Below the pieces are notes generated by a model. The model searched no databases. It had not been told where the DNA came from and saw nothing but the letters and a program-made list of their open reading frames with translations. A program made the position numbers and the translations under genes. From positions 1 through 64,000 of IMG/VR virus record IMGVR_UViG_3300028558_000791: a stretch of DNA of 64,000 bases; one strand, 5' to 3'. Positions 7,882-63,961 of the stretch are shown here, in pieces (position 1 is the stretch's first letter; each line of letters opens with the position of its first letter).

Positions 7882-9033
7882 ATGTTACAACTTCAAATTG
7901 CTGATGCAAACATCAGTAGCGGCAGCGTTGCAGTCTCATGGTGTCTTGACCACGAGCTTCTCAAGGTGCTTGCCGAAAAAGGACTGCACGATCCTCAAGT
8001 AGTAGTCGTAGTAGCTCCTGATAACAACTATCACACCTCGAAGGAATCCCGAAAGGTAGTTCCACTTAAAGACCTGATGACCTACATTGAGTGTAGGGCC
8101 GCGGGCAAGAGTAAGATTTATGGATTGATTTCTTTCCGTAAACCCAAGGAAGCTCGTGAACACTATCTCTCTAGAGAAGATGGCGCTTATCGAAATAACG
8201 TTTTAGACTATGATGGTGAGACCTATTCTTCCAACCTTCTTGGTCAGGAGGAGTACGAGGACCGGCAAAACAAAACCTATAAGTTTCTCAGTCAGCCTCT
8301 AGAAATTGATGTGCCCAAGGTGGTCTTTGCGCCTGATCCGCCCAAGTGGGAAAAGCCCTGGGTCAATCACTATTTCCGACAGAAGGTTGTAGACCAGTGC
8401 CATTACCGTAGGCGCCGTCTGTTTGCCTATTTAGTTCAGCCATTCATCGTACTCTTTTTCAGTATCGTCAAGACACTGATTCTAATCGCCGGATTGTTGA
8501 CCGGAGCTAGGGCTTGGTCTATGAAGTATCTACATCCGTTGACTTACGGATTGAAAGACACTTTTGAAATCTGGGAGAAGGGAAGTTTGTTCATTAAACA
8601 TCTTCCAGAAGATGAAGAAGAAAGTACGGACCTGAAATTTTTGACTCCGAGCTATGCTTGGCGTAGTTTCTGGGCGTTACTTTTCATGCCACTGTTCTCT
8701 TTTCCAATTATCTTCTTGATGATTTACCATCATCCAGTGATTGCAGGATTGATTGCTTTTGCCCCAGTCTTTATCATTGGAGTATTCTGCCTTATGGCCC
8801 ACCTCGTCTCACGAGGAAATGCCAGCAAGCTTCTTAAAGGAGCTTGGGAAGGTCTTCATAATTTGCTTACTAGTGATAAGCTGTGGTATATGGAGCAAGA
8901 AGATATTCAACTTATCACTTGCACTGGGGATAAAGGTCCCTTAACTTACAAAAATCTTCCTGCTAAACATAAGACGATTCGCTTAAGATTCCAGAACCTC
9001 AAGACCAAAGTTTGTAAGCCGTTTTCTGTTTGA
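7882..9033 (+). CDS. Hypothetical membrane protein
   Basis: About 3 hydrophobic segments; RBS AAGGA. Confidence 0.6.
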   Translation: MLQLQIADANISSGSVAVSWCLDHELLKVLAEKGLHDPQVVVVVAPDNNYHTSKESRKVVPLKDLMTYIECRAAGKSKIYGLISFRKPKEAREHYLSREDGAYRNNVLDYDGETYSSNLLGQEEYEDRQNKTYKFLSQPLEIDVPKVVFAPDPPKWEKPWVNHYFRQKVVDQCHYRRRRLFAYLVQPFIVLFFSIVKTLILIAGLLTGARAWSMKYLHPLTYGLKDTFEIWEKGSLFIKHLPEDEEESTDLKFLTPSYAWRSFWALLFMPLFSFPIIFLMIYHHPVIAGLIAFAPVFIIGVFCLMAHLVSRGNASKLLKGAWEGLHNLLTSDKLWYMEQEDIQLITCTGDKGPLTYKNLPAKHKTIRLRFQNLKTKVCKPFSV

Positions 9034-34205: not shown

Positions 34206-35393
34206 ATGAAAGTAGTGTATACTGGCGAGGATATGCCTGAAACGTTTACAAAATCCATCTTTTTAGCTGGACCTACGCCACGCAATAAAGATGAGCAGGA
34301 ATCCTGGCGTCCCGATGCCTTGCAGATTCTAGAAGATAAAGGATTTGATGGAGTTGTTTTCGTCCCTGAAGGACGTGATGGCCAGTTTAAACTAGATTAT
34401 GATGACCAGGTTGGCTGGGAAGAGAAGTATCTCAACGTGGCTGATTGTATCGTCTTCTGGGTTCCTCGTGACCTAGAACCAGATAGCAAAGGTTATCCTA
34501 AGATGGCAGCCTTTACTACTAATGTAGAGTTTGGAACCTGGCAGTCGAGCGGTAAGATTGTATTTGGTGCTCCGCCTGACGCGACTAAGAATGGGTATTT
34601 AAAACATTACGCCGAGAAGTATAGCGTCCCGGTAGCTGAGTCGCTGGTGGAAACGCTAGACGATGCCATGGGAATGGTAGAAGATGGTGCCGAGCGTAGT
34701 GGCGGGGAGCGATATGTTCCACTGTTCATCTGGAAACAGGATTCATTTCAGTCTTGGTATAAATCTCAGACTGATGCCGGTAATCGTTTAGAAGAAGCGC
34801 GTTTGCTTTATAGCTTTCGTCCCCGCTATAAGAGTTTTGTTTTCCTTTGGATTCTACATACTAAAATCTATGTTGAATCAGAAGATAGGGTAAAAGATAA
34901 TGAATTTGTTCTGGCCCGTCCTGATATTTCTTCTGTCTGCCTATACCACAAAGTGTCTGCTGGCTTCCCTGCGTCGTGGAAAGACATCGAAGTAGTTTTG
35001 GTTAGGGAATTTAGGGCTCCAGCCTCTACTAAAAATGGATTCATTCTGGAACTTCCAGGAGGAAGCTCAACTAAGGAAGCTAATCCAGAAGAGGTTGCTG
35101 CCGAAGAGGTGCATGAGGAGATGGGATTTTATATAGAACCATCTCGTTTGAAACTGCATGGCACTCGTCAGCTAGCTGCTACACTTTCCTCACACAAGTC
35201 TCATCTTTTTTCAGCGGAAATTACCGAAGAAGAAGCTGATTGGTTTAAGTCTCAGGAAGATATTGCTCACGGTAAAGAAGAAGATAGCGAAAGAACATTT
35301 ATTGAAGTTCACCCCATCTCTCAGTTAGTAAATGAAGAGTCAATTGACTGGACTACATTAGGACAAATTCTATCTGTAATTTCTAAAGTTTAA
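34206..35393 (+). CDS. Nucleoside 2-deoxyribosyltransferase-like domain fused to NUDIX hydrolase
   Basis: IFLAGPTPR...WE...TNVEFG; ELPGGS...AAEEVHEEMG. Confidence 0.8.
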   Translation: MKVVYTGEDMPETFTKSIFLAGPTPRNKDEQESWRPDALQILEDKGFDGVVFVPEGRDGQFKLDYDDQVGWEEKYLNVADCIVFWVPRDLEPDSKGYPKMAAFTTNVEFGTWQSSGKIVFGAPPDATKNGYLKHYAEKYSVPVAESLVETLDDAMGMVEDGAERSGGERYVPLFIWKQDSFQSWYKSQTDAGNRLEEARLLYSFRPRYKSFVFLWILHTKIYVESEDRVKDNEFVLARPDISSVCLYHKVSAGFPASWKDIEVVLVREFRAPASTKNGFILELPGGSSTKEANPEEVAAEEVHEEMGFYIEPSRLKLHGTRQLAATLSSHKSHLFSAEITEEEADWFKSQEDIAHGKEEDSERTFIEVHPISQLVNEESIDWTTLGQILSVISKV

Positions 35394-35421
35394 GAACCGG
35401 GTAATTTTGTCATATGATATT

Positions 35422-35583
35422 ATGTTCGATGACAAACTATACAAGTTTCTTTTTAAATGCGATGACTGTGCAATGATTGTCTCTATCGAGTTAGAGGAAG
35501 AAGACGAGCTAGAGAAGGTCAATGAGAATAAGTTCGTTCTCGAATGTCCTTGCGGTGGCCAGAGTCACGTACTGCGAGACTAA
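35422..35583 (+). CDS. 53-aa zinc-ribbon protein (not in ORF track)
   Basis: Hand translation: CDDC...CPCG. Confidence 0.55.
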   Translation: MFDDKLYKFLFKCDDCAMIVSIELEEEDELEKVNENKFVLECPCGGQSHVLRD

Positions 35584-35683
35584 TTTCATATACATACCTA
35601 TCAATACTGATATATAAAACGTATCGAAAGAGGGTTTCGATTTTCGGGCTACGTCCGTTTATTTTAGAAAATTATCTACGTCC

Positions 35684-35712
35684 TTGACGGCGAATGTGCA
35701 GAGTTTTACTAT
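35684..35712 (+). promoter_or_regulatory. sigma70-like promoter of Ro60 gene
   Basis: TTGACG-N17-TACTAT. Confidence 0.6.
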
Positions 35713-35787
35713 GCGCAACTCGACGACATCGGCATGTTTCGTTTCAATTTGTTGGGACTATTTCCCAAATATGGAAGGTGTATTATT

Positions 35788-37419
35788 ATGTCAAACAAGA
35801 ACTTATTCTCAAACAAGAACAAGCTAACGGTATCTGTTTCTAAGAAGGTAACTCTGCCAACCAACACGGTTAATGAGGCAGGTGGAACTGCATATAAGCT
35901 GTCCGACAAGGCTGCTTTGGCGCAGTACGCCATGACTGGTACGTTCAACGGTACATACTATGCATCCGATGCAGATCAACTTAAGAAGGTCCTTGAGTTG
36001 GCAAACAAGGTAGATCCAAAGTTCGTCGCTAAGCTGGCAGTGTACGCACGCCAGAGAGGCTTGATGAAGGATATGCCTGCCGTTCTTGCAGCCGTCATTG
36101 CTGGAAGAGACGCTGACCTATTGGCTACGATTTTCGATAGAGTAATCGACAATCCAAAGATGCTTCGTAACTTCGTTCAGATCATCCGATCTGGCGCAAC
36201 TGGCCGTAAGTCCTTGGGAACTCGCCCAAAGAAGTTGGTACAGAAGTATCTTGAGAACTTGACCGACGAGCAGTTGTTCAAGGCTGATGTTGGTAACGAT
36301 CCGTCGTTGCAGGACATCATCAAGTTGGTTCACCCAAAGCCAACTAACAAGCAGCGTTCTGCGTTGTACGGTTACTTGCTCGACAAGGAGTACAACAAGA
36401 GAGACCTCGTGTCTTTGGCACAACAGTTCGAAGCATTCAAGAAGGATATGAAGGGAGAGATCCCAGATGTTCCGTTCCAGATGTTGACGGCTCTGCCATT
36501 GACTGATACGCACTGGAAGCAGATTGCTGAGAATGCAACCTGGAACCAGATCCGTATGAACCTCAATACGTTTGCTCGTCACAACGTATTGGCTGACAAG
36601 AAGCTGGTCGATGTTTTGGCAGCAAAGCTATCGGACCCAGAGCAGGTCAAGCGTTCCAAGACGTTCCCATATCAGTTGTTCACCACTTACTTGAACGTGG
36701 ACGCCACGATTCCAAGCAAGCTGACGAACGCATTGCAAGATGCGGCTGATTCTTCTTTGGATAACATTCCTGAGTTCCCAGGAAAGGTCTTCGTAATGGT
36801 TGACACTTCTGGTTCTATGGGCTCTGCCGTCACCGGTAAGAGAGTAAATCCAAAGACTGGTAAGGAGGAATCCTTTACGACTAAGGCTCGATGCGTAGAC
36901 GTGGCAGCACTTTTCGCAGCAGCAATCTTGCGCAAGAATCCAGACACTGAGATTGTGCCATTCGACACCTCAGTACATGTTGGTCACCGATTCAATCCAC
37001 GTGATTCGATCATGACCAATGCAAAGACTCTAGCTTCATTCGGTGGTGGTGGTACCAACTGCTCCGCTGCTTTGGAGTATGTCAACAAAAAGGCTGGCAA
37101 GGGCGACCTTGTCATCTACGTGTCTGACAATGAGTCATGGGTTGATACGAAGGCATCTAACTCAGGTGTGTTCGGATACTACCGCCGTAATGGCACTGCC
37201 ACTATGGAAGAGTGGAATAAGTTCGCAGCCCGTAACAAGGGTGCAAAGCTTGTCTGTATCGACATTCAACCAAACTCCTCCACCCAAGCACACGACAGGG
37301 ATGACATCCTGAACGTGGGAGGATTCAGTGACCAGGTGTTCGATGTAATCGCAAGATTCGCCGAGCTTGGAAACAACAAGGATCTCTGGATCAAGACGAT
37401 CGAAGACGTCAAACTCTAA
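35788..37419 (+). CDS. rsr: Ro60 / TROVE domain RNA-binding protein (Rsr) with vWA domain
   Basis: NEAGGTAY, TGTFNGTYY, LVHPKP, RMNLNTFARH, MIDAS VDTSGSM, GGGTNCS, VSDNESW. Confidence 0.93.
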   Translation: MSNKNLFSNKNKLTVSVSKKVTLPTNTVNEAGGTAYKLSDKAALAQYAMTGTFNGTYYASDADQLKKVLELANKVDPKFVAKLAVYARQRGLMKDMPAVLAAVIAGRDADLLATIFDRVIDNPKMLRNFVQIIRSGATGRKSLGTRPKKLVQKYLENLTDEQLFKADVGNDPSLQDIIKLVHPKPTNKQRSALYGYLLDKEYNKRDLVSLAQQFEAFKKDMKGEIPDVPFQMLTALPLTDTHWKQIAENATWNQIRMNLNTFARHNVLADKKLVDVLAAKLSDPEQVKRSKTFPYQLFTTYLNVDATIPSKLTNALQDAADSSLDNIPEFPGKVFVMVDTSGSMGSAVTGKRVNPKTGKEESFTTKARCVDVAALFAAAILRKNPDTEIVPFDTSVHVGHRFNPRDSIMTNAKTLASFGGGGTNCSAALEYVNKKAGKGDLVIYVSDNESWVDTKASNSGVFGYYRRNGTATMEEWNKFAARNKGAKLVCIDIQPNSSTQAHDRDDILNVGGFSDQVFDVIARFAELGNNKDLWIKTIEDVKL

Positions 37420-37427
37420 TCGTCAGA

Positions 37428-37492
37428 GCCTCTAACCGAAGGGTGCCCGAGTGAAGACCGGGTTGCTGATGCAAGTTCAGCATGGAGGCCCA
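37428..37492 (+). ncRNA. Compact tRNA-like RNA directly after Ro60
   Basis: GCCTCTA/TGGAGGC plus CCA; GCTGA-TGCAAGT-TCAGC T-like arm; CCCG/CGGG arm. Confidence 0.55.
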
Positions 37493-37494
37493 TC

Positions 37495-37911
37495 ATGAAT
37501 AAGTTAGAAGATTTAGTGGCGGCAGCAAGACTAGCCGCCCAACATTCGTACAGTCCATACAGCAACTTCAAAGTTGCATCCGCCGTAGAAATGGAAGATG
37601 GAAGCATCTTTAGCGGCTCTAATGTAGAGAATGCGTCTTACGGTCTCACTATCTGTGCAGAGCGCAACGCAATCTTTCAAGCTGTGTCTAAGGGACATCG
37701 CCTAATAAAACGTATCATTGTCTACGCTCCTTCACCAACTGTTCGTACTGGCCCTTGTGGAGCCTGTAGGCAGGTAATTAAAGAATTTGCCGATGAATAT
37801 ACACTAATCATTGGCGCCTGTAACTCAGACGATATATTAACTTTTACAATGGAAGATTTGTTACCAAAGAGTTTTGGTCCCGATAATCTTCTAAAGAAAA
37901 GAAACCAATGA
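37495..37911 (+). CDS. cdd: Cytidine deaminase
   Basis: YSPYS, NVENASYGLTICAER, PCGACRQ. Confidence 0.93.
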   Translation: MNKLEDLVAAARLAAQHSYSPYSNFKVASAVEMEDGSIFSGSNVENASYGLTICAERNAIFQAVSKGHRLIKRIIVYAPSPTVRTGPCGACRQVIKEFADEYTLIIGACNSDDILTFTMEDLLPKSFGPDNLLKKRNQ

Positions 37912-38753
37912 TTAAGCGAAATGGCGTAGAGGTAATGAACGCCCGCACTAAAAACGTCTCTATTGCCAAAGAAACAATCGCTATAATCAACAACCAAAAA
38001 TACACCAATCTCAATGGAGATACAGTAGATATCTCAGTAGAAATGGATGCGGCCATAGACGGCACTCATTACTATGAGGCTGACGTTTTAGTCGGCATGC
38101 CCGCCGATCAGGCTCCCATTCACGCTACGATTGAGGTAGTAAATGAGACTACTGCTCAAGCTGCTGTTCGATTGCAAGCTAAAGGAAAAACTAATCTAGT
38201 TGCCCTTAACTTCGCTTCAGCGCGTAATCAAGGTGGAGGCTTTCTTTCTGGAGCTTTGGCTCAAGAAGAAGACTTGTGTAGGGCTTCTGGCCTATATGGT
38301 TGCCTGAAACGCAAACCATTGTTCTACAATGCAAACATCCTGTGTGACGATGCATTCTATACAAATGGAGTTCTCTACTCACCTAACGTTCCGTTCTTTA
38401 GGGATGATCATAATCTGTTTTTAGAGAAGCCTTTTCCGCTTTCTATCGTCTCAGCACCAGCTCCTAACCTTTCTAGCACCAAGTCGAACATCGACCCTAA
38501 AGTATTAACCTCTCTTATTAGAGAGCGTACTGTTAGGATTCTACAGGTGGCTCATGCCAATGGGCATAAGAACATCATTTTAGGTGCCTGGGGCTGTGGA
38601 GCCTTCGGAAATGATCCTGAAATGGTATCAAAAGCATTTATGTTGGCCCTAACTAAAGTTCCATATTTCGAGCATGTAACCTTTGCGGTATATGATACCA
38701 GAGAGCCGTACGTTTTATATGAAACGTTCAAAGAAGTCTGTAACGCTGTATAG
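37908..38753 (+). CDS. TIGR02452/DUF2263 bacterial-type poly(ADP-ribose) glycohydrolase
   Basis: LNFASA..GGGF..GALAQEEDLCRAS, LGAWGCGAFGN. Confidence 0.9.
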   Translation: MIKRNGVEVMNARTKNVSIAKETIAIINNQKYTNLNGDTVDISVEMDAAIDGTHYYEADVLVGMPADQAPIHATIEVVNETTAQAAVRLQAKGKTNLVALNFASARNQGGGFLSGALAQEEDLCRASGLYGCLKRKPLFYNANILCDDAFYTNGVLYSPNVPFFRDDHNLFLEKPFPLSIVSAPAPNLSSTKSNIDPKVLTSLIRERTVRILQVAHANGHKNIILGAWGCGAFGNDPEMVSKAFMLALTKVPYFEHVTFAVYDTREPYVLYETFKEVCNAV

Positions 38754-39315
38754 ACCAACCGGCCCAAAAGAGTTAGATTTGATTAAAAAGTCTAACTATA
38801 AGAAGTTCCCGCCCCGCTTGCCTGAACAACCAATTTTCTATCCAGTTCTTACAAAAGAGTATGCGGTAAAGATTGCACGAGATTGGAATGTAAAAGCTTC
38901 CGGAATAGGTTTTGTACTAGAATTCAAGGTCCGAAAGGATTTTCTAGACAAATATCCAGTGCAAGTAGCTGGCGGCAATTCTCATCAGGAGTATTGGATT
39001 CCAGCGGAAGAATTAGAAGACTTCAATCAAGCTCTAGTGGGCGAGATAAAGGTCACTGAGACGTACCAAGAGTGGTACATTTACATCCTAAAGTGTTCTG
39101 ATGGTACTTTGTACACAGGTATCACGAACAATCTGGGTAAACGAATCAAACAACATAACGAGGGTAAAGGCGCAAAGTACACGAAGGGTCGTGGTCCCGT
39201 TGCCCTTGTTAAGTTTTTCACCCGATTAACTAAGGGTGAAGCCCTGAAACTTGAATATCAGATCAAACAACTCTCTAAAGAAGAGAAACTGAATTACAAT
39301 GAGCAGAAGAGGTAA
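38719..39315 (+). CDS. Conserved LYRP..RLPEQPIFYPV domain fused to GIY-YIG nuclease
   Basis: C-terminal YIYILKCSDGTLYTGITNN..R..HN..GAKYT. Confidence 0.75.
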   Translation: MKRSKKSVTLYRPTGPKELDLIKKSNYKKFPPRLPEQPIFYPVLTKEYAVKIARDWNVKASGIGFVLEFKVRKDFLDKYPVQVAGGNSHQEYWIPAEELEDFNQALVGEIKVTETYQEWYIYILKCSDGTLYTGITNNLGKRIKQHNEGKGAKYTKGRGPVALVKFFTRLTKGEALKLEYQIKQLSKEEKLNYNEQKR

Positions 39316-39871
39316 AAAAAGTTTTAGTCCTCAATTTGAAAGAGACTACACTTTTTATCTGTCTAATAAAGATAACTTCACATTTGCTGGTTCAGATCTA
39401 AAATTACAATATCGTATTCAGTTTCCAGGAGAACCGGAACCAATTGGTAAGGATGAAGGGGGAAAGGACATTAATGTTCCATTCTCTATTCCTTACTCAG
39501 CAACTGGTAAAACTGCCAAGGTATGTTTCTATTCGCTAGATAGCGAAGGTAAATGTAAACCTTGTGCAGAACCGCAACTTCTAGTAGAAATTCTCACTTG
39601 TAAGGCCGCAATCAATCTACAGATTAAGATTTGGTCACAGAGTCGAGCCGAGTATACTTTATCCAAGATTGAGTTACAAGAATATCTTGATCACTATCAA
39701 GCTCCTGAATGGGTTTTCAAAGCGATTGAGAATCAAAAACTTAAGATTTTGAAGGAATGGAGCGCCGAAAAGCTTTATAAATCCGACTATTACAAGCGGG
39801 CTTATGAGCTTCATATGGGCGAATTTTTAGAAGAGATGCGTGGTTCCGGTGTTATATTAGATCCGAAATGA
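39299..39871 (+). CDS. Hypothetical protein
   Basis: Packed ORF. Confidence 0.55.
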   Translation: MSRRGKKSFSPQFERDYTFYLSNKDNFTFAGSDLKLQYRIQFPGEPEPIGKDEGGKDINVPFSIPYSATGKTAKVCFYSLDSEGKCKPCAEPQLLVEILTCKAAINLQIKIWSQSRAEYTLSKIELQEYLDHYQAPEWVFKAIENQKLKILKEWSAEKLYKSDYYKRAYELHMGEFLEEMRGSGVILDPK

Positions 39872-39893
39872 TCAAACACTGATTAGGAACATA

Positions 39894-40595
39894 ATGACCA
39901 AGGAAAACTTTACATCTATCAACGTAATCATCGACGCATCTGGCTCGATGTCTCACCTCACCCATGACACCATCGGGAACTTTAATACCTTCTTGCAAGA
40001 GCAAAAGGCATTCCCCGGTGAAGCTGTCTTCACTCTTTGTACTTTCAATACTGATTATCACTTGGTCCATGACTTCGTGAAGATTGCTGGTGTCCCTAGC
40101 TTGGATGCTAAGACCTATGTTCCACAAGGTGGAACCGCTTTGTTAGATGCTATGGGATCAACTATTGATTCTGTTGGTAAGAAGTTGGCCGCATTACCAG
40201 AAGAGGAACGTCCTTCTAAGGTTATTTTCCTCATCATCACTGATGGTCATGAAAACTCCAGTCGTCGTTTTGATGCGGCTCAAGTTAAGTCTATGGTCGA
40301 ACATCAGAAGGATACTTATAGTTGGGAGTTCGTATTCATGGGCGCTAACATTGATGCTATCTCTGCCGGCACCAACCTTGGTATCTCTATGCAGAACACT
40401 CTCAACTACGTTCCAAGTGCCGCTGGTACCGAGAATTTGTACAAGAGTATCAGTTCTAACGTAAGCAGCTATCGTGGCTCCAACTCTTCTAGAGTTGACT
40501 TTTTCAATCAGACTCAACAGGGCGTTGGCTCAGTTACTCCTCCAGTCGTAGTTACAACTACCACTACGGTAACTCCTCCAAAGACCTCAAAGTAA
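39894..40595 (+). CDS. von Willebrand factor A domain protein
   Basis: IIDASGSM, GGTALLDA, ITDGHENSS. Confidence 0.88.
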   Translation: MTKENFTSINVIIDASGSMSHLTHDTIGNFNTFLQEQKAFPGEAVFTLCTFNTDYHLVHDFVKIAGVPSLDAKTYVPQGGTALLDAMGSTIDSVGKKLAALPEEERPSKVIFLIITDGHENSSRRFDAAQVKSMVEHQKDTYSWEFVFMGANIDAISAGTNLGISMQNTLNYVPSAAGTENLYKSISSNVSSYRGSNSSRVDFFNQTQQGVGSVTPPVVVTTTTTVTPPKTSK

Positions 40596-40599
40596 TATC

Positions 40600-40806
40600 A
40601 TGTGTGCCGTTTCAGTTATCTATGACATGTTTGGTGGACAACCAGACGATTGGTATACGCTGGAACGTATTGATCTTTTCAAACGTATGGTGGCTGATGC
40701 TCGACTCTTCGATGAGGAGTCGGGCCAGCCCGATTGCGAAGACCCTGAAAAAACTAAAGTTACTGAACGCATTGAAAAAATCGAAGAAGAACTAGAGCAG
40801 AAGTAA
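40600..40806 (+). CDS. Hypothetical phage protein
   Basis: MCAVSVIYD...QPDCEDPEK. Confidence 0.55.
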   Translation: MCAVSVIYDMFGGQPDDWYTLERIDLFKRMVADARLFDEESGQPDCEDPEKTKVTERIEKIEEELEQK

Positions 40807-40807
40807 A

Positions 40808-41416
40808 ATGACTAAAGCATTATATGTTGGTAGTTTCGACCCTATCACCAACGGTCATATTGATATTATGAAGCGTAGCTTACAGTTCTGTAAGCAACTG
40901 GTGATTGGGATAGGTATCAATCCTAACAAGACTACTATGTTTGATGAGCGGGAGAGGAACTCCATGATTTTTCAAACGATAGTGAAGGAGTTTGACTTCC
41001 TTCATTCAACCAATACTTCGGTTGCTTCTTTTCAGGGACTTACAGTAGAGTATGCTAAAGAAATTGGTGCAACGATTCTAATTCGCGGAATTAGATCCGT
41101 TTCTGATTTCGAATATGAAATTAATTTGGCCAACATCAACAAGGTTCTGGCCCCATCAATTGAAACAATTTTCCTGCCCACCAGTCCTGATCTGGCGGTT
41201 GTCTCCTCTTCAATGGTAAAAGAAATTGCAAAGTTGAACGGAGATATTTCAAGATTCGTACCCAGCTATATTGCCGAGAGGATTCATTCAAAATTCGGTT
41301 TCTTCAAGCATGGCAAGACAGAGATTGGCACTGATACTATCAATAGATTACGAGAAGCTACAGTAGCTATTGAGAAAGAATTGGGAATCAAACCAAAAGA
41401 TGAGGGCGAAAAATAA
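40808..41416 (+). CDS. coaD: Phosphopantetheine adenylyltransferase
   Basis: GSFDPITNGH, IRGIRSVSDFEYE, VSSSMVKEIA. Confidence 0.92.
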   Translation: MTKALYVGSFDPITNGHIDIMKRSLQFCKQLVIGIGINPNKTTMFDERERNSMIFQTIVKEFDFLHSTNTSVASFQGLTVEYAKEIGATILIRGIRSVSDFEYEINLANINKVLAPSIETIFLPTSPDLAVVSSSMVKEIAKLNGDISRFVPSYIAERIHSKFGFFKHGKTEIGTDTINRLREATVAIEKELGIKPKDEGEK

Positions 41417-41430
41417 AAATTAGCGACGGG

Positions 41431-41458
41431 TTGACGAGCTAATTTTTAAGACTACAAT
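41431..41458 (+). promoter_or_regulatory. sigma70-like promoter of the RNA cluster
   Basis: TTGACG-N16-TACAAT. Confidence 0.55.
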
Positions 41459-42168: not shown

Positions 42169-42245
42169 GCCACTACTAGCTCAATTGGTTAGAGCACTGG
42201 ATTGTGGATCCGGGGGTTTCGGTTCGATTCCGAAGTTTGGTACCA
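42169..42245 (+). tRNA. tRNA-His(GTG)-like, imperfect acceptor
   Basis: CTGGA-TTGTGGA-TCCGG; lacks C73. Confidence 0.75.
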
Positions 42246-42353
42246 TGACGAATGTCCGAGTAGGATTACATTTTTATGCAAAAAAACCGATGGGGTTCGA
42301 TTCCCCTTTAGGGCTGGCGCCAGGCAAAACATCTTATTCATTTCTTGTCGTCA
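42246..42353 (+). ncRNA. Y RNA-like 1 (T-arm cargo)
   Basis: TGACGA-ATG..GAGTAGGAT-TACA / ATCTTATTC..TTG-TCGTCA; internal GGGG-TTCGATT-CCCC. Confidence 0.8.
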
Positions 42354-42355
42354 AT

Positions 42356-42727: not shown

Positions 42728-42801
42728 GACTTTGTGGACAAATTATTAAGTCACTCCCGTTAGAGGGAGAGATGTAAGTGCAAGGCTTGCCAAGGTCACC
42801 A
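42728..42801 (+). ncRNA. tRNA-like RNA with 6-nt anticodon loop (GTTAGA)
   Basis: GACTTTG/CAAGGTC plus ACCA; CTCCC/GGGAG; T-loop TGCAAGG. Confidence 0.7.
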
Positions 42802-42802
42802 T

Positions 42803-43019
42803 GTAACAAATGCCCCGAGAGGATTACATTCATTAGGAGAACGAGGTCGTGGGTCCGAGTCCCACCACTGCTACCATCCCAAAGCACGTCATTAAATTGA
42901 AGGGACACTCGAAAGAGTGATGTTGCCTGACTTACTTAGCGAAAGCTATCTAAGTCCTCATAGCAGTGTAGCTCAGTTGGCAGAGCGCGAAAAACATCTT
43001 TTCAAATTTTTGTTGTTAC
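42803..43019 (+). ncRNA. Y RNA-like 3 containing a circularly permuted tRNA with internal CCA
   Basis: GTAACAA-ATG..GAGAGGAT-TACA / ATCTTTTC..TTG-TTGTTAC; T arm plus CACTGCT-A-CCA precedes AGCAGTG plus D arm. Confidence 0.85.
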
Positions 43020-43515: not shown

Positions 43516-43624
43516 AATAATACGGGGATTGATTAGACCGAAATGATCCGTATTAGCTGTTATGTTTGGTCAATTCTGCATAACGACAGAAGCTATGTCC
43601 AGTAAAATGGAGTCGTCTTCTGAA

Positions 43625-43880
43625 GATGAATGCCGATAAGGATTACACTAATACAACCGAGCCTCACGCCGTAGAATGCCCGCAAGGATTTCATTCCACA
43701 AATACCGGGTGGCTCACATCTCCCACTACATTACAAGAGATGATGAAAATTAAACTGAGATGTCTGACAAGCCTGCCTACCAGTTAGAGTAACAGGCTCA
43801 GTGGTGTAACTGATAATACACTGTGATTACTTGTTTACTTGTAAACAAAATAATTGCTATCTTTATCAACTTTAGTCATC
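43625..43880 (+). ncRNA. Y RNA-like 4 (large unknown cargo)
   Basis: GATGA-ATG..GATAAGGAT-TACA / ATCTTTATC..TAG-TCATC. Confidence 0.7.
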
Positions 43881-43887
43881 AAAATAT

Positions 43888-43982: not shown

Positions 43983-44411
43983 ATGTTTACTTCAACCGGA
44001 ATCCTTCAATATGATCCTGGTCAGGGTCTAAAACATTTCGATCCATGGTGGGCTCTTCTAGCCTGTGACGATGAAGTATCTAGGTATTATGCCTGGTTAC
44101 TAAAGAGACACGGAGTAGAAGTCTACCCTAACGATAAAGGGTTGTGGGGAACACACGTTTCAGTTTTGAAAGGTGCCGTCCCTCCCAATCAAGATAAGTG
44201 GGGCAAGTATCAAGACTTCGAAGTAGAAATCCATCTCAATCATCTTGTCCGTTATGATAACGGGAAACATGCTTGGGTAGATGTATACTCAGAAGATTTA
44301 TCAGCAATCCGACAGGAGTTAGGCTTCGATGCCAAGCCCTGGTACCATCTGACAATTGGTAGGTTGGTGAGACCATTTGATGTGGACTTTACCAAATATG
44401 GCATAACCTGA
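43983..44411 (+). CDS. 2H phosphoesterase family protein
   Basis: Two HxS/T motifs (THVSV, YHLTI) about 65 aa apart. Confidence 0.7.
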   Translation: MFTSTGILQYDPGQGLKHFDPWWALLACDDEVSRYYAWLLKRHGVEVYPNDKGLWGTHVSVLKGAVPPNQDKWGKYQDFEVEIHLNHLVRYDNGKHAWVDVYSEDLSAIRQELGFDAKPWYHLTIGRLVRPFDVDFTKYGIT

Positions 44412-44427
44412 TATATAATCAGCACAT

Positions 44428-44502
44428 ACCCTCGTACGCATCGGGTGAGGCGGGAAGCTTGTCAAGCTTTTGAGGGCGGTTCGAGTCCGCTCGGGGGTGC
44501 CA
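44428..44502 (+). tRNA. tRNA-Asp(GTC)
   Basis: GAAGC-TTGTCAA-GCTTT; G73-CCA. Confidence 0.85.
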
Positions 44503-44569
44503 AAGTCAAATGCCTTGATAGGATTACATTTTACCAAAAGAAAACATCTTATCTACTTTTTGTTGACTT
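44503..44569 (+). ncRNA. Y RNA-like 5 (minimal, stem only)
   Basis: AAGTCAA-ATG..GATAGGAT-TACA / AAAC-ATCTTATC..TTG-TTGACTT. Confidence 0.8.
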
Positions 44570-44572
44570 TTT

Positions 44573-44666
44573 CGATCACGCGTAGCTGGTTGCTCGGGCG
44601 AGACTTATAATCTTGCAAGGACTGATATTCCGTAACGGCAGGGTTCGATTCCCTGGTGATCGACCA
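44573..44666 (+). tRNA. Atypical tRNA-Ile(TAT), 6-bp anticodon stem, long variable region
   Basis: CGATCAC/GTGATCG plus ACCA; GCGAGA-CTTATAA-TCTTGC. Confidence 0.75.
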
Positions 44667-45270: not shown

Positions 45271-45481
45271 GTAACGAATGCAGTTAGGATTACATCCATA
45301 ACGACCTTAAAGTAGTTGACAGAGCCGCGAGGCGCTGAATCGATGGCAACAAAACGATCACCAGGTAATGCTGAGGTCCATCAGACTCTTGAGTCGAAGT
45401 TGCGGGGCGAACGGGAAGTATCTCGAAAGAGACTTTCAATGTGCCGGTCACACCCAGTATCTTAGCAATTTTTGTCGTTAT
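45271..45481 (+). ncRNA. Y RNA-like 6 (large unknown cargo)
   Basis: GTAACGA-ATG..GTTAGGAT-TACA / ATCTTAGC..TTG-TCGTTAT. Confidence 0.78.
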
Positions 45482-45894: not shown

Positions 45895-46048
45895 GAGGCA
45901 AATGCACCGAAGGTTTACATTTGGAATAATCATATCGTCGTAAGACGGTCGCAGGTTCGAATCCTGCAACTTCCGAAAGGAAGTTTGGCTGAGTGGTCTA
46001 AAGCAATGATGCTGAAAAGCATGCTAACTTTCAAATTTTTGTTGCTTC
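45895..46048 (+). ncRNA. yrlA: Y RNA-like 7, classical YrlA architecture
   Basis: GAGGCAA-ATG / TTG-TTGCTTC; T arm GCAGG-TTCGAAT-CCTGC, acceptor AACTTCC-GAAA-GGAAGTT, then D arm. Confidence 0.85.
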
Positions 46049-50072: not shown

Positions 50073-50149
50073 GGGTCTTTTGATGTAAAGGCTGGCCTCT
50101 AGACTTTAGTGCTAGAGGACATCGGGTTCGACTCCCGAATGATCCGCCA
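50073..50149 (+). ncRNA. tRNA-like RNA, no D stem, loop CT-TTA-GT
   Basis: GGGTC/GATCC plus GCCA; CCTCTAG/CTAGAGG; TCGGG-TTCGACT-CCCGA. Confidence 0.65.
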
Positions 50150-54903: not shown

Positions 54904-55710
54904 ATGAAGAAATTTTTTCTTGTATTATCGCTTCTTGCAGTAGGTATCTTCGCCGGCTGTGGTTCTCAATTAGTTGAGTTCCCAGAAGACGGGGCGGCCA
55001 CCGCAGATAGCGGCGTTCCAGTAGACGACGGCTCTACTGATAACGATGTAAATGTAACACCACCTGATAGTGGTGTATGCGTGGATCAAAATTGTCCTTT
55101 GGGACAAGCATGTCAAAATGGCGTTTGTACTCCTGTCGATCCTTGCTCCGGCGTTACCTGCCCTGATGGTGACGTTTGCAAAGATGGAACCTGTACTCCA
55201 GTTGACCCATGCGTTGGTGTAACTTGCCCTGATGGCAGCGTATGTAAAGACGGCATTTGCACTCCAGTTGATCCTTGTGCTGGCGTAACTTGCCCTAAAG
55301 GTGTTCAGTGTGTGAATGGCACTTGCCCAACTCCACCTGATGCTGGCTTGCCTGATTCCGGTCCACCAAAGGATCCATGTGATGGTGTCTGCTGTCCCAA
55401 GAATGATGTCTGCAAAGACGGAGCTTGTGTACCAGTTGATCCTTGTGCAGGCGTGAAGTGCTGTGTTGGTAAGGTCTGTAAGGAAGGTGCTTGTGTCCCA
55501 GTTGACCCATGTGCTGGAGTACAGTGCCCAGAAAGCAGGGTCTGTAAGAATGGCTCATGTGTATGTGATGGTGATAATGATGATGACAACCACGGTTGCA
55601 AGAGCGGTCAAGACCGTGTCTGTAGCTGGAGTCATGGACAGAAACATCACCACTGTGTTGATCATGACAAGACCTCTTGTCATCAGAAGCATGGTGATAA
55701 AAAAGAGTAA
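54904..55710 (+). CDS. Cys-rich repeat lipoprotein
   Basis: FAGC lipobox; about 6 PVDPCxGVxCPxxxVCKDGxC repeats. Confidence 0.8.
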   Translation: MKKFFLVLSLLAVGIFAGCGSQLVEFPEDGAATADSGVPVDDGSTDNDVNVTPPDSGVCVDQNCPLGQACQNGVCTPVDPCSGVTCPDGDVCKDGTCTPVDPCVGVTCPDGSVCKDGICTPVDPCAGVTCPKGVQCVNGTCPTPPDAGLPDSGPPKDPCDGVCCPKNDVCKDGACVPVDPCAGVKCCVGKVCKEGACVPVDPCAGVQCPESRVCKNGSCVCDGDNDDDNHGCKSGQDRVCSWSHGQKHHHCVDHDKTSCHQKHGDKKE

Positions 55711-56566: not shown

Positions 56567-56898
56567 ACATGAGCTTAGCTTGGTCAAAGGATATGGAATT
56601 GGATCCTGGTACGTTTGGAGGTTCTCCGGCATGCCATGTTTTAGTAGATATGATGAATCACAATGTTATTCCTATTATAGAGAAGCATCGTGTTTTATCA
56701 TTCATCAATGATGCTATCTATCAATTCAAGTGGTTATCCACTGTGAAGGAGTATGGCGTCAAGGAGAGGTCTATGGTTCTGATGAGGGACGATATTCTAT
56801 CTAGGGTGGATCATATGCCATATCCTGCCAAGTTTAATTCACATCTGAAGAACGTGATAACTCACCACTTCAGACGATACTTGAAAGAAGAGACCTAG
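56563..56898 (+). CDS. Hypothetical protein
   Basis: Packed ORF. Confidence 0.5.
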   Translation: MNMSLAWSKDMELDPGTFGGSPACHVLVDMMNHNVIPIIEKHRVLSFINDAIYQFKWLSTVKEYGVKERSMVLMRDDILSRVDHMPYPAKFNSHLKNVITHHFRRYLKEET

Positions 56899-57250
56899 AC
56901 AATCGCTCCCGTAAGGAGAGGAAAGTCGGAGCTACGTAGGGCAATTTGCTGGCTAACGGCCAGGCGCAGTGATGCGACAGATAGTGCAACAGAAAAGAAA
57001 CCGCCATGAATCCGCCAGGCCCGAAAGGGAGCAACGGTAGATGGTAAGGGTGAAATGGTGGGGTAAGAGCCCACCGCACCTATAGTGATATAGGTGGCAA
57101 GGTAAACCTCAGATGTAGCAAGCTAAATAGAGAGTGACTTGTCCGGTCAATACTCTCGGGTTAGTGCTGGAGCCATTAGGTAACTAACGGCCAAGATTAA
57201 TGATTGTCTCGATTTATAGACAGGACTCCGCTTATAGGGTGTCTTCTTTC
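56883..57250 (+). ncRNA. rnpB: RNase P RNA, bacterial type A
   Basis: GAGGAAAGTCGGAG, AGTGCAACAGAAA, GGGTGAAA..GGTAAGAG, GGTAAACC, ACAGGACTCCGCTTA; P1 GAAAGAAGA/TCTTCTTTC. Confidence 0.93.
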
Positions 57251-63890: not shown

Positions 63891-63961
63891 AGGGTCGAGT
63901 ATAGGATACAACGGAGCCTCCAAAACTCCGGAAGAGGGTTCAATTCCCTCCGGCCCTGCCA
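63891..63961 (+). tRNA. tRNA-Trp(CCA) with shrunken D arm
   Basis: AGGGTCG/CGGCCCT plus GCCA; loop CTCCAAA. Confidence 0.8.

What the first reader, a model, noticed from the sequence alone, without database searches (positions are those of the whole stretch)
44503..44569. Cargo-less 67-nt minimal Y RNA
Seen: only the two conserved helices and a ~20-nt loop (TACATTTTACCAAAAGAAAAC), wedged between tRNA-Asp CCA and the next tRNA. It defines the minimal conserved unit. Inference: it could act as a Ro60 plug or sponge, or be the blank scaffold into which cargoes insert.
Basis: partly seen in the sequence, partly recalled or inferred. Interest (0 to 1): 0.65.

Follow-up and report, generated by a model that had tools for sequence, protein, structure and literature searches.

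The report
Hairpin-only Y RNA in a jumbo phage
The 67-base element is a real, conserved small structured RNA: the hairpin-only (YrlB-like) member of a family of Ro60-associated Y RNAs that this 481-kb soil phage and its relatives carry between their tRNA genes. That makes it a new example of a known kind of RNA, not a new kind.

Summary
Confirmed. Window 44503-44569 (+) folds as described. It has an outer helix (AAGUCAA/UUGACUU), an asymmetric internal loop (AUGCCUU / UACUUUUUG), an inner helix (GAUAGGAU/AUCUUAUC) and a 21-nt loop. It fills the spacer between tRNA-Asp CCA and the next tRNA.

It is one of seven paralogues in this 480,838-bp phage record. All lie on the + strand in tRNA arrays, downstream of a Ro60 orthologue (35734-37419; TROVE + Ro60-vWA). 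It is the only one without a large insert.

A covariance model built only from other phages' short copies finds it at 62.5 bits, E about 1e-12. Twenty-two short copies from 11 viral records share both helices, and 12 of 14 pairs show compensatory changes. Copies at the same tRNA-Asp to tRNA-Ile(UAU) position exist in three relatives whose Ro60 is 74-84% identical.

The conserved letters (AAUG-C, GGAUUACAU, AUC, UUUGU) match the Salmonella YrlB consensus column for column. The Rfam score is nevertheless far below threshold.

Most likely it is a YrlB-class Ro60 ligand, cut out of a tRNA-Y RNA precursor by tRNA end-processing. Expression and binding could not be tested because no RNA runs exist. 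The "blank scaffold" idea is disfavoured; "gate or plug" remains open.

Novelty: new member of a known kind.

The parts
44503..44569 (+). Whole hairpin-only Y RNA (67 nt), YrlB-like
   Evidence: R2, a model built without this genome, scores it 62.5 bits, E about 1e-12. R1 scores it 70.8 bits. Fold.
44503..44509 (+). H1 5' strand, AAGUCAA
   Evidence: Pairs with 44563-44569. H1 columns covary across the family.
44505..44512 (+). GUCAAAUG, the counterpart of the GNCGAAN0-1G motif proposed for Rsr contact
   Evidence: Seven of eight positions fit the motif of PMC4201824. The G-to-A change is matched by C-to-U on the 3' strand. That column pair (10/82) reads GC 14, AU 6, GU 2.
44510..44516 (+). 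5' side of the internal loop, AUGCCUU. AUG is invariant in the family.
   Evidence: AATG is invariant in 22 of 22 short copies. It aligns to AAUG-C of the Rfam YrlB consensus.
44517..44524 (+). H2 5' strand, GAUAGGAU
   Evidence: Pairs with 44546-44553. Seven of eight H2 pairs show compensatory changes.
44525..44545 (+). 21-nt loop, UACAU followed by an A-rich stretch
   Evidence: Loops of the 22 short copies are 14-31 nt. Twenty-one begin UACAU and one (L130) UACUU. The last 10 nt are 55% A, against 28% A in the window.
44546..44553 (+). H2 3' strand, AUCUUAUC
44554..44562 (+). 3' side of the internal loop, UACUUUUUG
   Evidence: The conserved UUUUUG(U) aligns to AUUUGu of the YrlB consensus.
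44563..44569 (+). H1 3' strand, UUGACUU. It is followed by UUU (44570-44572).
44428..44502 (+). tRNA-Asp(GUC) with encoded CCA. Its 3' end abuts the Y RNA 5' end.
   Evidence: ARAGORN; Rfam tRNA 40 bits. In 14 of 22 short copies an upstream tRNA ends within -1 to +4 nt of H1.
44573..44666 (+). Next tRNA, Ile(UAU)-like, 94 nt. Its 5' end lies 3 nt after the Y RNA.
   Evidence: ARAGORN. The same tRNA follows the syntenic copies in L130, L133 and L124.
35734..37419 (+). Ro60/Rsr orthologue (561 aa), the presumed protein partner
   Evidence: Pfam vWA_Ro60 52.1 bits and TROVE 37 bits, both above cut-off. PDB matches to Thermus phage phiLo Ro60 (9KOP, E 3e-12) and D. radiodurans Rsr (2NVO, E 9e-9).
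42245..42354 (+). Paralogue A (110 nt): same Ro60-type stem plus a T-arm-like hairpin
42803..43019 (+). Paralogue B (217 nt): insert holds a permuted tRNA-like module with an encoded CCA
43623..43882 (+). Paralogue G (260 nt), the weakest member
   Evidence: Descriptor scan. R1 26.3 bits, E 2.5e-4.
45271..45481 (+). Paralogue D (211 nt)
45895..46048 (+). Paralogue E (154 nt): T-arm and D-arm-like insert, weak full-length YrlA match
   Evidence: (YrlA 24.2 bits).
56887..57250 (+). Phage-encoded RNase P RNA (class A). It may take part in cutting the tRNA-Y RNA precursor. This is an inference.
   Evidence: Rfam RF00010, 272.5 bits.

Best explanation
The element is a hairpin-type Y RNA of the YrlA/YrlB lineage, closest to Salmonella YrlB. 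It consists only of the Ro60-binding module (H1, the AAUG / UUUUUG internal loop, H2 and UACAU) closed by a short A-rich loop.

Proposed pathway:
1. It is transcribed with the tRNA array as one precursor (inferred).
2. Its 3' end is released by RNase P cleavage at the next tRNA, 3 nt downstream. Its 5' end is released by 3' maturation of tRNA-Asp, whose CCA it abuts (inferred from the anatomy; D. radiodurans Yrn2 is made together with tRNA-Asp).
3. It binds the phage's own Ro60 ring, encoded 7 kb upstream on the same strand (inferred from motif conservation and co-occurrence).
4. It lacks the tRNA-like effector module of its six paralogues. It therefore most likely serves either as a gate or competitor that occupies Ro60 without the tRNA-like tether, or as a minimal tether through its single-stranded A-rich loop to a host exoribonuclease such as PNPase. 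The phage encodes no PNPase or RNase PH.

Shown: the structure, its conservation, its synteny and its association with Ro60. Inferred: expression, processing, binding and role.
For: Structure and conservation:
- An independent model finds it at E about 1e-12.
- H1 and H2 are recovered by RNAalifold on two different alignments, with 8 of 15 and 12 of 14 compensatory pairs.
- 93.5% of cells are paired, against 71% in shuffles and 34-68% in slid controls.

Link to known Y RNAs:
- The Rfam YrlB model aligns full length to exactly this element (22.3 bits). AAUG-C, GGAUUACAU, CAUC and UUUGU coincide.
- A second short copy in a relative hits YrlB independently at 27 bits.
- The motif fits GNCGAAN0-1G and YUAY of PMC4201824.

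Link to Ro60:
- A Ro60 orthologue lies in the window.
- Eight of 10 other records carrying the RNA family have a TROVE ORF. The two without are 27-52% complete fragments.
- The RNAs are always on the Ro60 strand and 0.1-13 kb downstream of it.
- In the complete 118-kb record G007, the order is Ro60 stop codon, 78 nt, two short copies, then one long copy, with no tRNAs alongside. This mirrors Salmonella rsr-yrlB-yrlA.
- Only 323 of 50,697 phage records match this Ro60 at all.

Stable class:
- Syntenic short copies lie between tRNA-Asp and tRNA-Ile(UAU) in G002, G001 and L124, whose Ro60 is 84%, 78% and 74% identical. Their stems carry compensatory changes.

Processing:
- Fourteen of 22 short copies start within -1 to +4 nt of an upstream tRNA end. 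Ten of 22 end 2-7 nt before the next tRNA.
- The phage encodes an RNase P RNA.

Host nuclease:
- No RNase PH/PNPase or RtcB domain is found in the genome.
- Phage phiLo Ro60 and its Y-like RNAs form ternary complexes with host PNPase (PMC12135203).
Against: - There is no expression or binding evidence. No RNA run holds the sequence.
- Rfam scores are far below the gathering thresholds: YrlB 22.3 against 97, and no YrlA hit for this element.
- The GNCGAA motif has A in place of G here.
- The element lies 7.1 kb from Ro60, beyond the 4 kb used as a criterion in PMC4201824.
- It is dispensable in some lineages. Relative L123 has only a 36-nt spacer at this site. A soil-metagenome contig about 92% identical across the upstream ORF and tRNA-Asp keeps only the H1 arms, with H2 and the loop deleted (joint 44512 to 44579).
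- Model R1 finds nothing near the Ro60 genes of phiLo, Gordonia phage Sixama or LR745206. The link to experimentally validated phage Y RNAs is therefore indirect.
Confidence: 0.8

Rival explanations
1. It is a decaying remnant: a formerly module-bearing Y RNA that lost its tRNA-like insert by deletion and is on its way out, with no function of its own.
For: - A close relative in a soil metagenome has gone further and deleted H2 and the loop, keeping only the H1 arms.
- L123 has no element at this site.
- The loop (UUUUACCAAAAGAAAAC) resembles the first small hairpin of paralogue A followed directly by the A-run that precedes H2. That pattern is compatible with a deletion.
Against: - Both helices are perfectly paired and every family-invariant base is kept.
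- The site holds a short copy in three diverged relatives, with compensatory stem changes.
- Short copies occur one to three times in every related genome checked.
- This is the only short copy in this genome.
Confidence: 0.08
2. It is a tRNA-precursor spacer hairpin that guides or punctuates processing of the tRNA array (an RNase P, RNase E or RNase III signal) and has nothing to do with Ro60.
For: It sits flush between two tRNAs, as most short copies do.
Against: - In G007 the same short elements lie directly behind the Ro60 stop codon with no flanking tRNAs.
- The unpaired letters, rather than just a stem, are conserved, and they coincide with the Salmonella YrlB consensus.
- Most tRNA spacers in the window lack the element.
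- The family tracks the presence of Ro60.
Confidence: 0.05
3. It is a blank scaffold or landing pad: an empty copy of a modular element into which effector modules are inserted over evolutionary time.
For: - Inserts in all long copies sit at the same place, between UACAU and the A-run before H2.
- Insert size changes between likely orthologues with an identical outer helix (GUAACAA): B is 217 nt, its L123 counterpart 141 nt.
Against: - The copy at this site has stayed short across phages whose Ro60 differs by 16-26%.
- No case was seen of a short copy at a site where an orthologue carries an insert.
- There are no signs of mobility such as target duplications, and the arms covary rather than being conserved repeats.
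Confidence: 0.05
4. It is an intrinsic terminator or attenuator within the tRNA array, because the stem is followed by a U-run.
For: H1 is followed by UUUUU (44568-44572).
Against: - The terminator scan finds nothing on the + strand here.
- The outer stem is A/U-rich with a 53-nt interior.
- tRNAs continue immediately downstream on the same strand.
- The U-run is not conserved in other short copies.
Confidence: 0.02

Closest known systems
Salmonella enterica YrlB (Rfam RF02565), the short Rsr-bound Y RNA of the rsr-yrlB-yrlA-rtcBA operon
   Same: - Same size class: 67 nt here against a 78-position model.
- Same architecture: terminal helix, asymmetric internal loop, inner helix, small loop.
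- Same conserved letters in the same places: AAUG-C, GGAUUACAU, AUC and UUUGU.
- No tRNA-like module.
- Encoded downstream of Ro60 on the same strand.
   Different: - It scores only 22.3 bits against a gathering score of 97.
- It reads CAAAUG rather than CGAAUG.
- Its loop is A-rich and lacks the 4-bp third helix of the model.
- It is encoded by a phage inside a tRNA array and abuts a tRNA CCA.
- No RtcB is present.
YrlA (Rfam RF02553), bacterial and phage Y RNAs with a tRNA-like effector module (PMC4201824; bioRxiv 10.1101/312249)
   Same: It shares the Ro60-binding module (GNCGAAN0-1G, YUAY). Its six paralogues in this genome look like YrlA relatives: the insert runs T-arm, closing stem, then D-arm, and copy E gives a weak full-length YrlA hit.
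   Different: This element has no tRNA-like module at all. No copy here reaches the YrlA gathering score.
D. radiodurans Yrn2 and M. smegmatis YrlB, hairpin-type second Y RNAs (PMC4201824)
   Same: They are long hairpins with a small loop that coexist with a tRNA-like Y RNA. [quoted passage not shown]
   Different: The D. radiodurans RNAs have the metazoan-type bulged helix and are a separate lineage. No sequence similarity was detected.
Thermus phage phiLo Yrl1 and Yrl2 with phage Ro60 (PMC12135203; PDB 9KOP, 9L5Y)
   Same: A phage-encoded Ro60, the best PDB match of the window's protein (E 3e-12), has phage-encoded Y-like RNAs nearby. Binding and a ternary complex with host PNPase were shown there.
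   Different: The phiLo RNAs lie upstream of Ro60 and are not detected by model R1. There are two copies, against seven here, and they are not interleaved with tRNAs.

Membership tests
Bacterial/phage Y RNA (YrlA/YrlB lineage) | Encoded near a Ro60/TROVE gene on the same strand (PMC4201824 used a distance of 4 kb or less) | tested here: met
   The strand is the same and the element lies 7.1 kb downstream of Ro60 (35734-37419), which is further than 4 kb. In relatives the family lies 0.1-13 kb downstream on the same strand in 5 of 5 records.
Bacterial/phage Y RNA (YrlA/YrlB lineage) | Long stem formed by pairing of the 5' and 3' ends, interrupted by an internal loop | tested here: met
   H1 has 7 bp and H2 has 8 bp, supported by covariation.
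Bacterial/phage Y RNA (YrlA/YrlB lineage) | GNCGAAN0-1G motif near the 5' end | tested here: inconclusive
   This element reads GUCAAAUG, which fits 7 of 8 positions. The G-to-A change is compensated on the 3' strand. At that column, 16 of the 22 short copies have G (the canonical CGAAUG or a UGAAUG/AGAAUG variant) and 6 have A.
Bacterial/phage Y RNA (YrlA/YrlB lineage) | Bound and stabilised by Ro60/Rsr | not testable with these tools
   No RNA-protein prediction tool was available and no RNA runs exist.
Bacterial/phage Y RNA (YrlA/YrlB lineage) | Expressed as a discrete small RNA | not testable with these tools
   All 24 runs that hold the sequence are DNA metagenomes.
Rfam RF02565 YrlB | Score at or above the gathering threshold (97 bits) | tested here: not met
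   It scores 22.3 bits in a full-length alignment, with E 0.03 over 301 nt and 2.6 over 24 kb. The threshold is very high for a 78-position model, and BLAST with YrlB itself found orthologues only in other S. enterica serovars (PMC4201824).
Rfam RF02553 YrlA | tRNA-like effector module (T arm, D arm, closing stem) | tested here: not met
   The loop is 21 nt with no T or D arm, and this element gives no YrlA hit.
Metazoan-type Y RNA (bulged-C helix GGUCCGA/UUGACU) | Conserved bulged helix | tested here: not met
   No Rfam Y_RNA match was found. The UUGACU at the 3' end varies among paralogues, so the resemblance is coincidental.
Intrinsic terminator | G+C-rich short hairpin followed directly by a U-run | tested here: not met
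   The scan finds no + strand terminator at this place.
tRNA | Cloverleaf detected by ARAGORN or Rfam | tested here: not met
   Neither tool calls a tRNA in 44503-44569.

The most novel reading that the evidence does not exclude
Soil jumbo phages of this clade run a multi-adaptor Ro60 system. One Ro60 ring is served by three to ten Y RNA paralogues whose effector modules differ. The conserved hairpin-only copy would be the dedicated 'off' ligand: a gate that caps phage Ro60, or a decoy for a host Rsr, and competes with the tRNA-like tethers. Its dosage would be set by being cut from the same precursor as tRNA-Asp.
Probability: 0.15. Interest if true: 0.7.

Novelty: new member of a known kind. 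Interest (0 to 1): 0.42.

Why it matters
Y RNAs are modular: a Ro60-binding stem plus an effector module. For the bacterial YrlA/YrlB lineage, only the 5' strand of the Ro60-binding region was recognisable in the RNAs studied so far (PMC4201824), and that region has been modelled on the frog complex (bioRxiv 10.1101/312249).

This phage clade offers a natural experiment. Dozens of paralogues share one stem and differ in everything else, and the hairpin-only copies show what is indispensable: H1, AAUG, H2, UACAU and UUUUUG-U. That gives a 60-70-nt construct for binding and structural work with a phage Ro60.

It also shows that Ro60 systems in large phages can carry many Y RNAs. These are embedded in tRNA arrays and probably matured by tRNA-processing enzymes.

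The element itself, however, fits an existing category. It does not overturn anything.

Tried and rejected
- **Loose pattern scan:** a 5'-arm pattern run over viral contigs returned mostly single chance matches and was dropped. A tighter pattern worked.
- **Distant Ro60 loci:** model R1 found nothing convincing near the Ro60 genes of Thermus phage phiLo, Gordonia phage Sixama or the 635-kb phage LR745206. Rfam at gathering thresholds found no YrlA or YrlB in any relative. The family is therefore not linked to experimentally validated phage Y RNAs by sequence.
- **Model R2 structure:** the automatic consensus for R2 captured only H1, because MAFFT misaligned the 3' strand of H2. R2 was used only as an independent detector.
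- **Third helix:** the small helix in the loop of this element (UUUU/AAGA) is weak and is not conserved across short copies. It was dropped from the model.
- **Promoter and terminator scans:** these gave nothing specific at the element. A promoter-like site at 41431-41458, ahead of the array, is no better than the shuffled background.
- **Expression:** no RNA runs exist, and the reads laid were DNA contigs only.
- **Reviews:** two Y RNA reviews (PMC10870794, PMC6047535) are not held in the library.
- **Overlapping ORF:** the antisense 72-aa ORF at 44319-44537 was dismissed because it runs through tRNA-Asp.

Full report
**What is there.** The window is the first 64 kb of a 480,838-bp virus record from a rhizosphere or soil metagenome. 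It holds 29 tRNA genes, a class A RNase P RNA and a Ro60 orthologue.

- Outer helix H1: AAGUCAA (44503-44509) pairs with UUGACUU (44563-44569).
- Asymmetric internal loop: AUGCCUU on the 5' side and UACUUUUUG on the 3' side.
- Inner helix H2: GAUAGGAU (44517-44524) pairs with AUCUUAUC (44546-44553).
- Loop: the 21-nt UACAUUUUACCAAAAGAAAAC.

The minimum-free-energy fold gives this shape (-11.6 kcal/mol, z = -2.1). tRNA-Asp(GUC) ends with its CCA at 44502. The next tRNA, Ile(UAU)-like, starts at 44573. The element therefore fills the spacer apart from three U.

**It is one of a family.** Repeat finding and a descriptor scan of the whole genome found seven copies with the same arms.

| Copy | Coordinates | Length (nt) |
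|---|---|---|
| A | 42245-42354 | 110 |
| B | 42803-43019 | 217 |
| G | 43623-43882 | 260 |
| C (this element) | 44503-44569 | 67 |
| D | 45271-45481 | 211 |
| E | 45895-46048 | 154 |
| F | 76351-76474 (genome coordinates) | 124 |

All seven are on the + strand and lie inside tRNA arrays. A covariance model of six of them (R1) finds nothing else in the 481 kb. Duplex folding gives the same H1, internal loop and H2 architecture for every copy. The H1 sequences differ between copies while staying complementary, so these are not conserved inverted repeats. RNAalifold on the plain alignment recovers exactly H1 and H2, with 8 of 15 pairs compensated. C is the only copy without a large insert. In the long copies the insert always lies between UACAU and the A-run that precedes H2. 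In four of six it contains a T-arm-like hairpin, and B and E also have D-arm-like sequence.

**Is it more than chance?** R1 found further members in relatives that were fetched through the Ro60 protein, including short ones of 64-83 nt. A tighter DNA pattern followed by R1 brought in about ten more viral contigs of 17-447 kb.

- A model built only from 21 short copies of other records (R2) has its best hit in the window at 44499-44572. The hit is full length, 62.5 bits, E about 1e-12.
- On a MAFFT alignment of 22 short copies, RNAalifold again predicts H1 and H2. Twelve of 14 pairs show double-sided changes.
- On 19 members aligned to R1, 93.5% of cells are paired, against 71% in shuffles (0 of 500 reached it) and 34-68% when the partner is slid. 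Thirteen of 15 pairs are compensated. That alignment is fitted to the model, so it leans towards the structure. One search does not have this bias.

**Why call it a Y RNA?** Three lines of evidence point the same way.

1. *The protein.* ORF 35734-37419 has the TROVE and Ro60-vWA domains above the Pfam cut-offs. It matches the solved Ro60 of Thermus phage phiLo (E 3e-12) and D. radiodurans Rsr (E 9e-9).
2. *The association.*
   - Eight of 10 other records that carry the RNA family have a TROVE ORF of 528-597 aa. The two without are fragments estimated at 27% and 52% complete.
   - In five whole records the RNAs (three to ten per record) are always on the Ro60 strand and 0.1-13 kb downstream of it.
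   - In the complete 118-kb record G007, the Ro60 stop codon is followed after 78 nt by two short copies and one long copy with T and D arms. No tRNAs flank them. This is the rsr-yrlB-yrlA order of Salmonella.
   - Ro60 is rare in phages. Only 323 of 50,697 records match this protein.
3. *The letters.*
   - The Rfam YrlB model aligns end to end with exactly this element. AAUG-C, GGAUUACAU, CAUC and UUUGU coincide and the helices are compensated.
   - A short copy in relative L123 hits YrlB independently at 27 bits.
   - These letters include the GNCGAAN0-1G and YUAY motifs that Chen et al. describe for YrlA and YrlB (PMC4201824).
   - Element C reads GUCAAAUG. At the varying position the family reads G or A, with the partner C or U changing in step (GC 14, AU 6, GU 2).
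   - The Rfam scores are far below the gathering thresholds, so formal Rfam membership is not met. BLAST with YrlB itself found orthologues only in other S. enterica serovars (PMC4201824).

**A stable class or an accident?** The same junction, tRNA-Asp CCA then a short Y RNA then tRNA-Ile(UAU), is present in three relatives.

| Record | Locus and coordinates | Ro60 identity to the window's |
|---|---|---|
| G002 | L133 653-732 | 84% |
| G001 | L130 3808-3885 | 78% |
| L124 | L124 20037-20103 | 74% |

The stems have changed in a compensated way. For example, the H2 G-U pair becomes U-A in G001, and U-A in H1 becomes G-C in L124. Every related genome examined has one to three short copies beside the longer ones. 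Loops of short copies are 14-31 nt, begin UACAU in 21 of 22 (UACUU in L130) and are A-rich at the 3' side. This matches the published observation that each characterised bacterium has a tRNA-like Y RNA plus a hairpin-type one with a small loop (PMC4201824).

The site can also be lost. L123 (Ro60 69% identical) has only a 36-nt spacer there. One soil-metagenome contig, about 92% identical across the upstream ORF and tRNA-Asp, joins 44512 to about 44557. That removes H2 and the loop and keeps the H1 arms. The copy is therefore conserved but not indispensable in every lineage. In this genome it is the only short copy.

**How it probably works.** What has been shown is a conserved two-helix RNA module that is tied to Ro60 genes. 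Everything below is inferred.

- *Release from a precursor.* The element starts at the base after the tRNA-Asp CCA and ends 3 nt before the next tRNA. Fourteen of 22 short copies abut an upstream tRNA end, and ten of 22 end 2-7 nt before the next tRNA. The simplest route is release from a polycistronic precursor by RNase P at the 3' side and by tRNA 3'-end maturation at the 5' side. D. radiodurans Yrn2 is likewise made from one precursor with tRNA-Asp (PMC4201824). The phage carries its own RNase P RNA.
- *Binding to Ro60.* The RNA would then bind the outer face of the phage Ro60 ring through the H1, AAUG and H2 module.
- *Role.* It lacks the tRNA-like module. It may act as a gate or competitor; Y RNA blocks Rsr-dependent rRNA maturation in D. 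radiodurans, as cited in PMC4201824. Alternatively it may still tether a host nuclease through its single-stranded A-rich loop. The genome encodes no RNase PH/PNPase or RtcB domain, so any nuclease partner would be the host's, as shown for phage phiLo (PMC12135203).

**Rivals.**

- *Decaying remnant.* This is possible, given the deletion variant. It is disfavoured by perfect pairing, retention of all invariant letters and syntenic conservation.
- *Plain tRNA-spacer processing hairpin.* This is contradicted by the tRNA-free arrangement behind Ro60 in G007 and by the conserved unpaired letters.
- *Blank scaffold for insertions.* This is disfavoured because the site stayed short across diverged phages and no short-to-long transition was seen at an orthologous site.
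- *Terminator.* None is predicted, and tRNAs continue downstream.

**Novelty.** Phage Ro60 with Y-like RNAs is known in mycobacteriophages, CcrColossus, Bacillus phage G and phiLo (PMC4201824, PMC12135203). Hairpin-type Y RNAs are also known. This element is a new member of that kind. What is less usual is the context: seven to ten paralogues per jumbo-phage genome, interleaved with tRNAs and flush with CCA ends, and a Ro60-binding module close to that of enterobacterial YrlB. The closest isolate is Myxococcus phage Mx1 (Ro60 52% identical). It has two unannotated family members, and one overlaps a 40-aa 'hypothetical protein'.

**Limits.** There is no RNA evidence of any kind. Binding is inferred. 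E-values from the home-made models are rough. The pattern used to collect short copies selects for similarity to this element, so the collection is not an unbiased census.

Noticed in passing
window 56887-57250 (+): A full-length bacterial class A RNase P RNA (272.5 bits) is encoded by the phage, 5 kb beyond one tRNA block. It may serve the phage's own tRNA and Y RNA maturation.
   Followed up: partly
window 42803-43019 (+): The insert of paralogue B looks like a circularly permuted tRNA. A T arm plus a 3' acceptor strand ending in an encoded CCA (42851-42877) comes first. About 80 nt later come the 5' acceptor strand and a D arm (42960-42988). This recalls M. smegmatis YrlA, which is cut by RNase P and receives CCA.
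   Followed up: partly
window 44512/44579 joint in run X3: A soil-metagenome contig of a relative about 92% identical lacks about 44 nt (44513 to about 44556). The Y RNA is reduced to its outer helix with AAUG joined directly to AUUUUGU.
   Followed up: partly
window 43623-43882, inner motif at 43675-43700: The 260-nt paralogue G carries a second, partial 5'-arm-like motif inside its insert (GAATGCCCGCAAGGATTTCAT). It may be a nested or duplicated arm.
   Followed up: no
L125 (Myxococcus phage Mx1, OR576727.2) 8197-8329 and 8549-8659: Two unannotated members of the family lie in the tRNA array of phage Mx1, 11-12 kb upstream of its TROVE gene on the same strand. The second overlaps CDS WNM70101.1, a 40-aa 'hypothetical protein' that is probably a mis-call.
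   Followed up: partly
L153 (G007) 913-1260, - strand: In a complete 118-kb phage whose Ro60 is only 34% identical, the Ro60 stop codon is followed after 78 nt by two short Y RNAs and one tRNA-like Y RNA. This is the same order as Salmonella rsr-yrlB-yrlA.
   Followed up: yes
window 50073-50149 and 42728-42801 (+): ARAGORN calls a tRNA with anticodon UUA, which reads the stop codon UAA and may be a suppressor. It also calls a tRNA-like gene with an irregular anticodon loop.
   Followed up: no
window 63891-63961 (+): There is a weak tmRNA-like match (22.5 bits, below threshold). Mx1 and Gordonia phage Sixama carry full tmRNA genes beside their Ro60 and tRNA regions.
   Followed up: no
window 55108-55539 (+): Five tandem 66-nt coding repeats are rich in TGC/TGT codons (cysteine-rich 22-aa units).
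   Followed up: no
window 34206-41416 and 43983-44411 (+): The neighbours of Ro60 are nucleotide and RNA-end enzymes. They are a nucleoside 2-deoxyribosyltransferase-NUDIX fusion, a dCMP deaminase, a microbial PARG, a GIY-YIG nuclease and a cytidylyltransferase. A weak 2H-phosphoesterase-like ORF lies directly upstream of tRNA-Asp.
   Followed up: partly
G000 229261-229659 (+) and 258639-259010 (-): The phage genome has two CCA-adding/poly(A) polymerase-family nucleotidyltransferase genes. No RtcB and no RNase PH/PNPase domain was found.
   Followed up: partly
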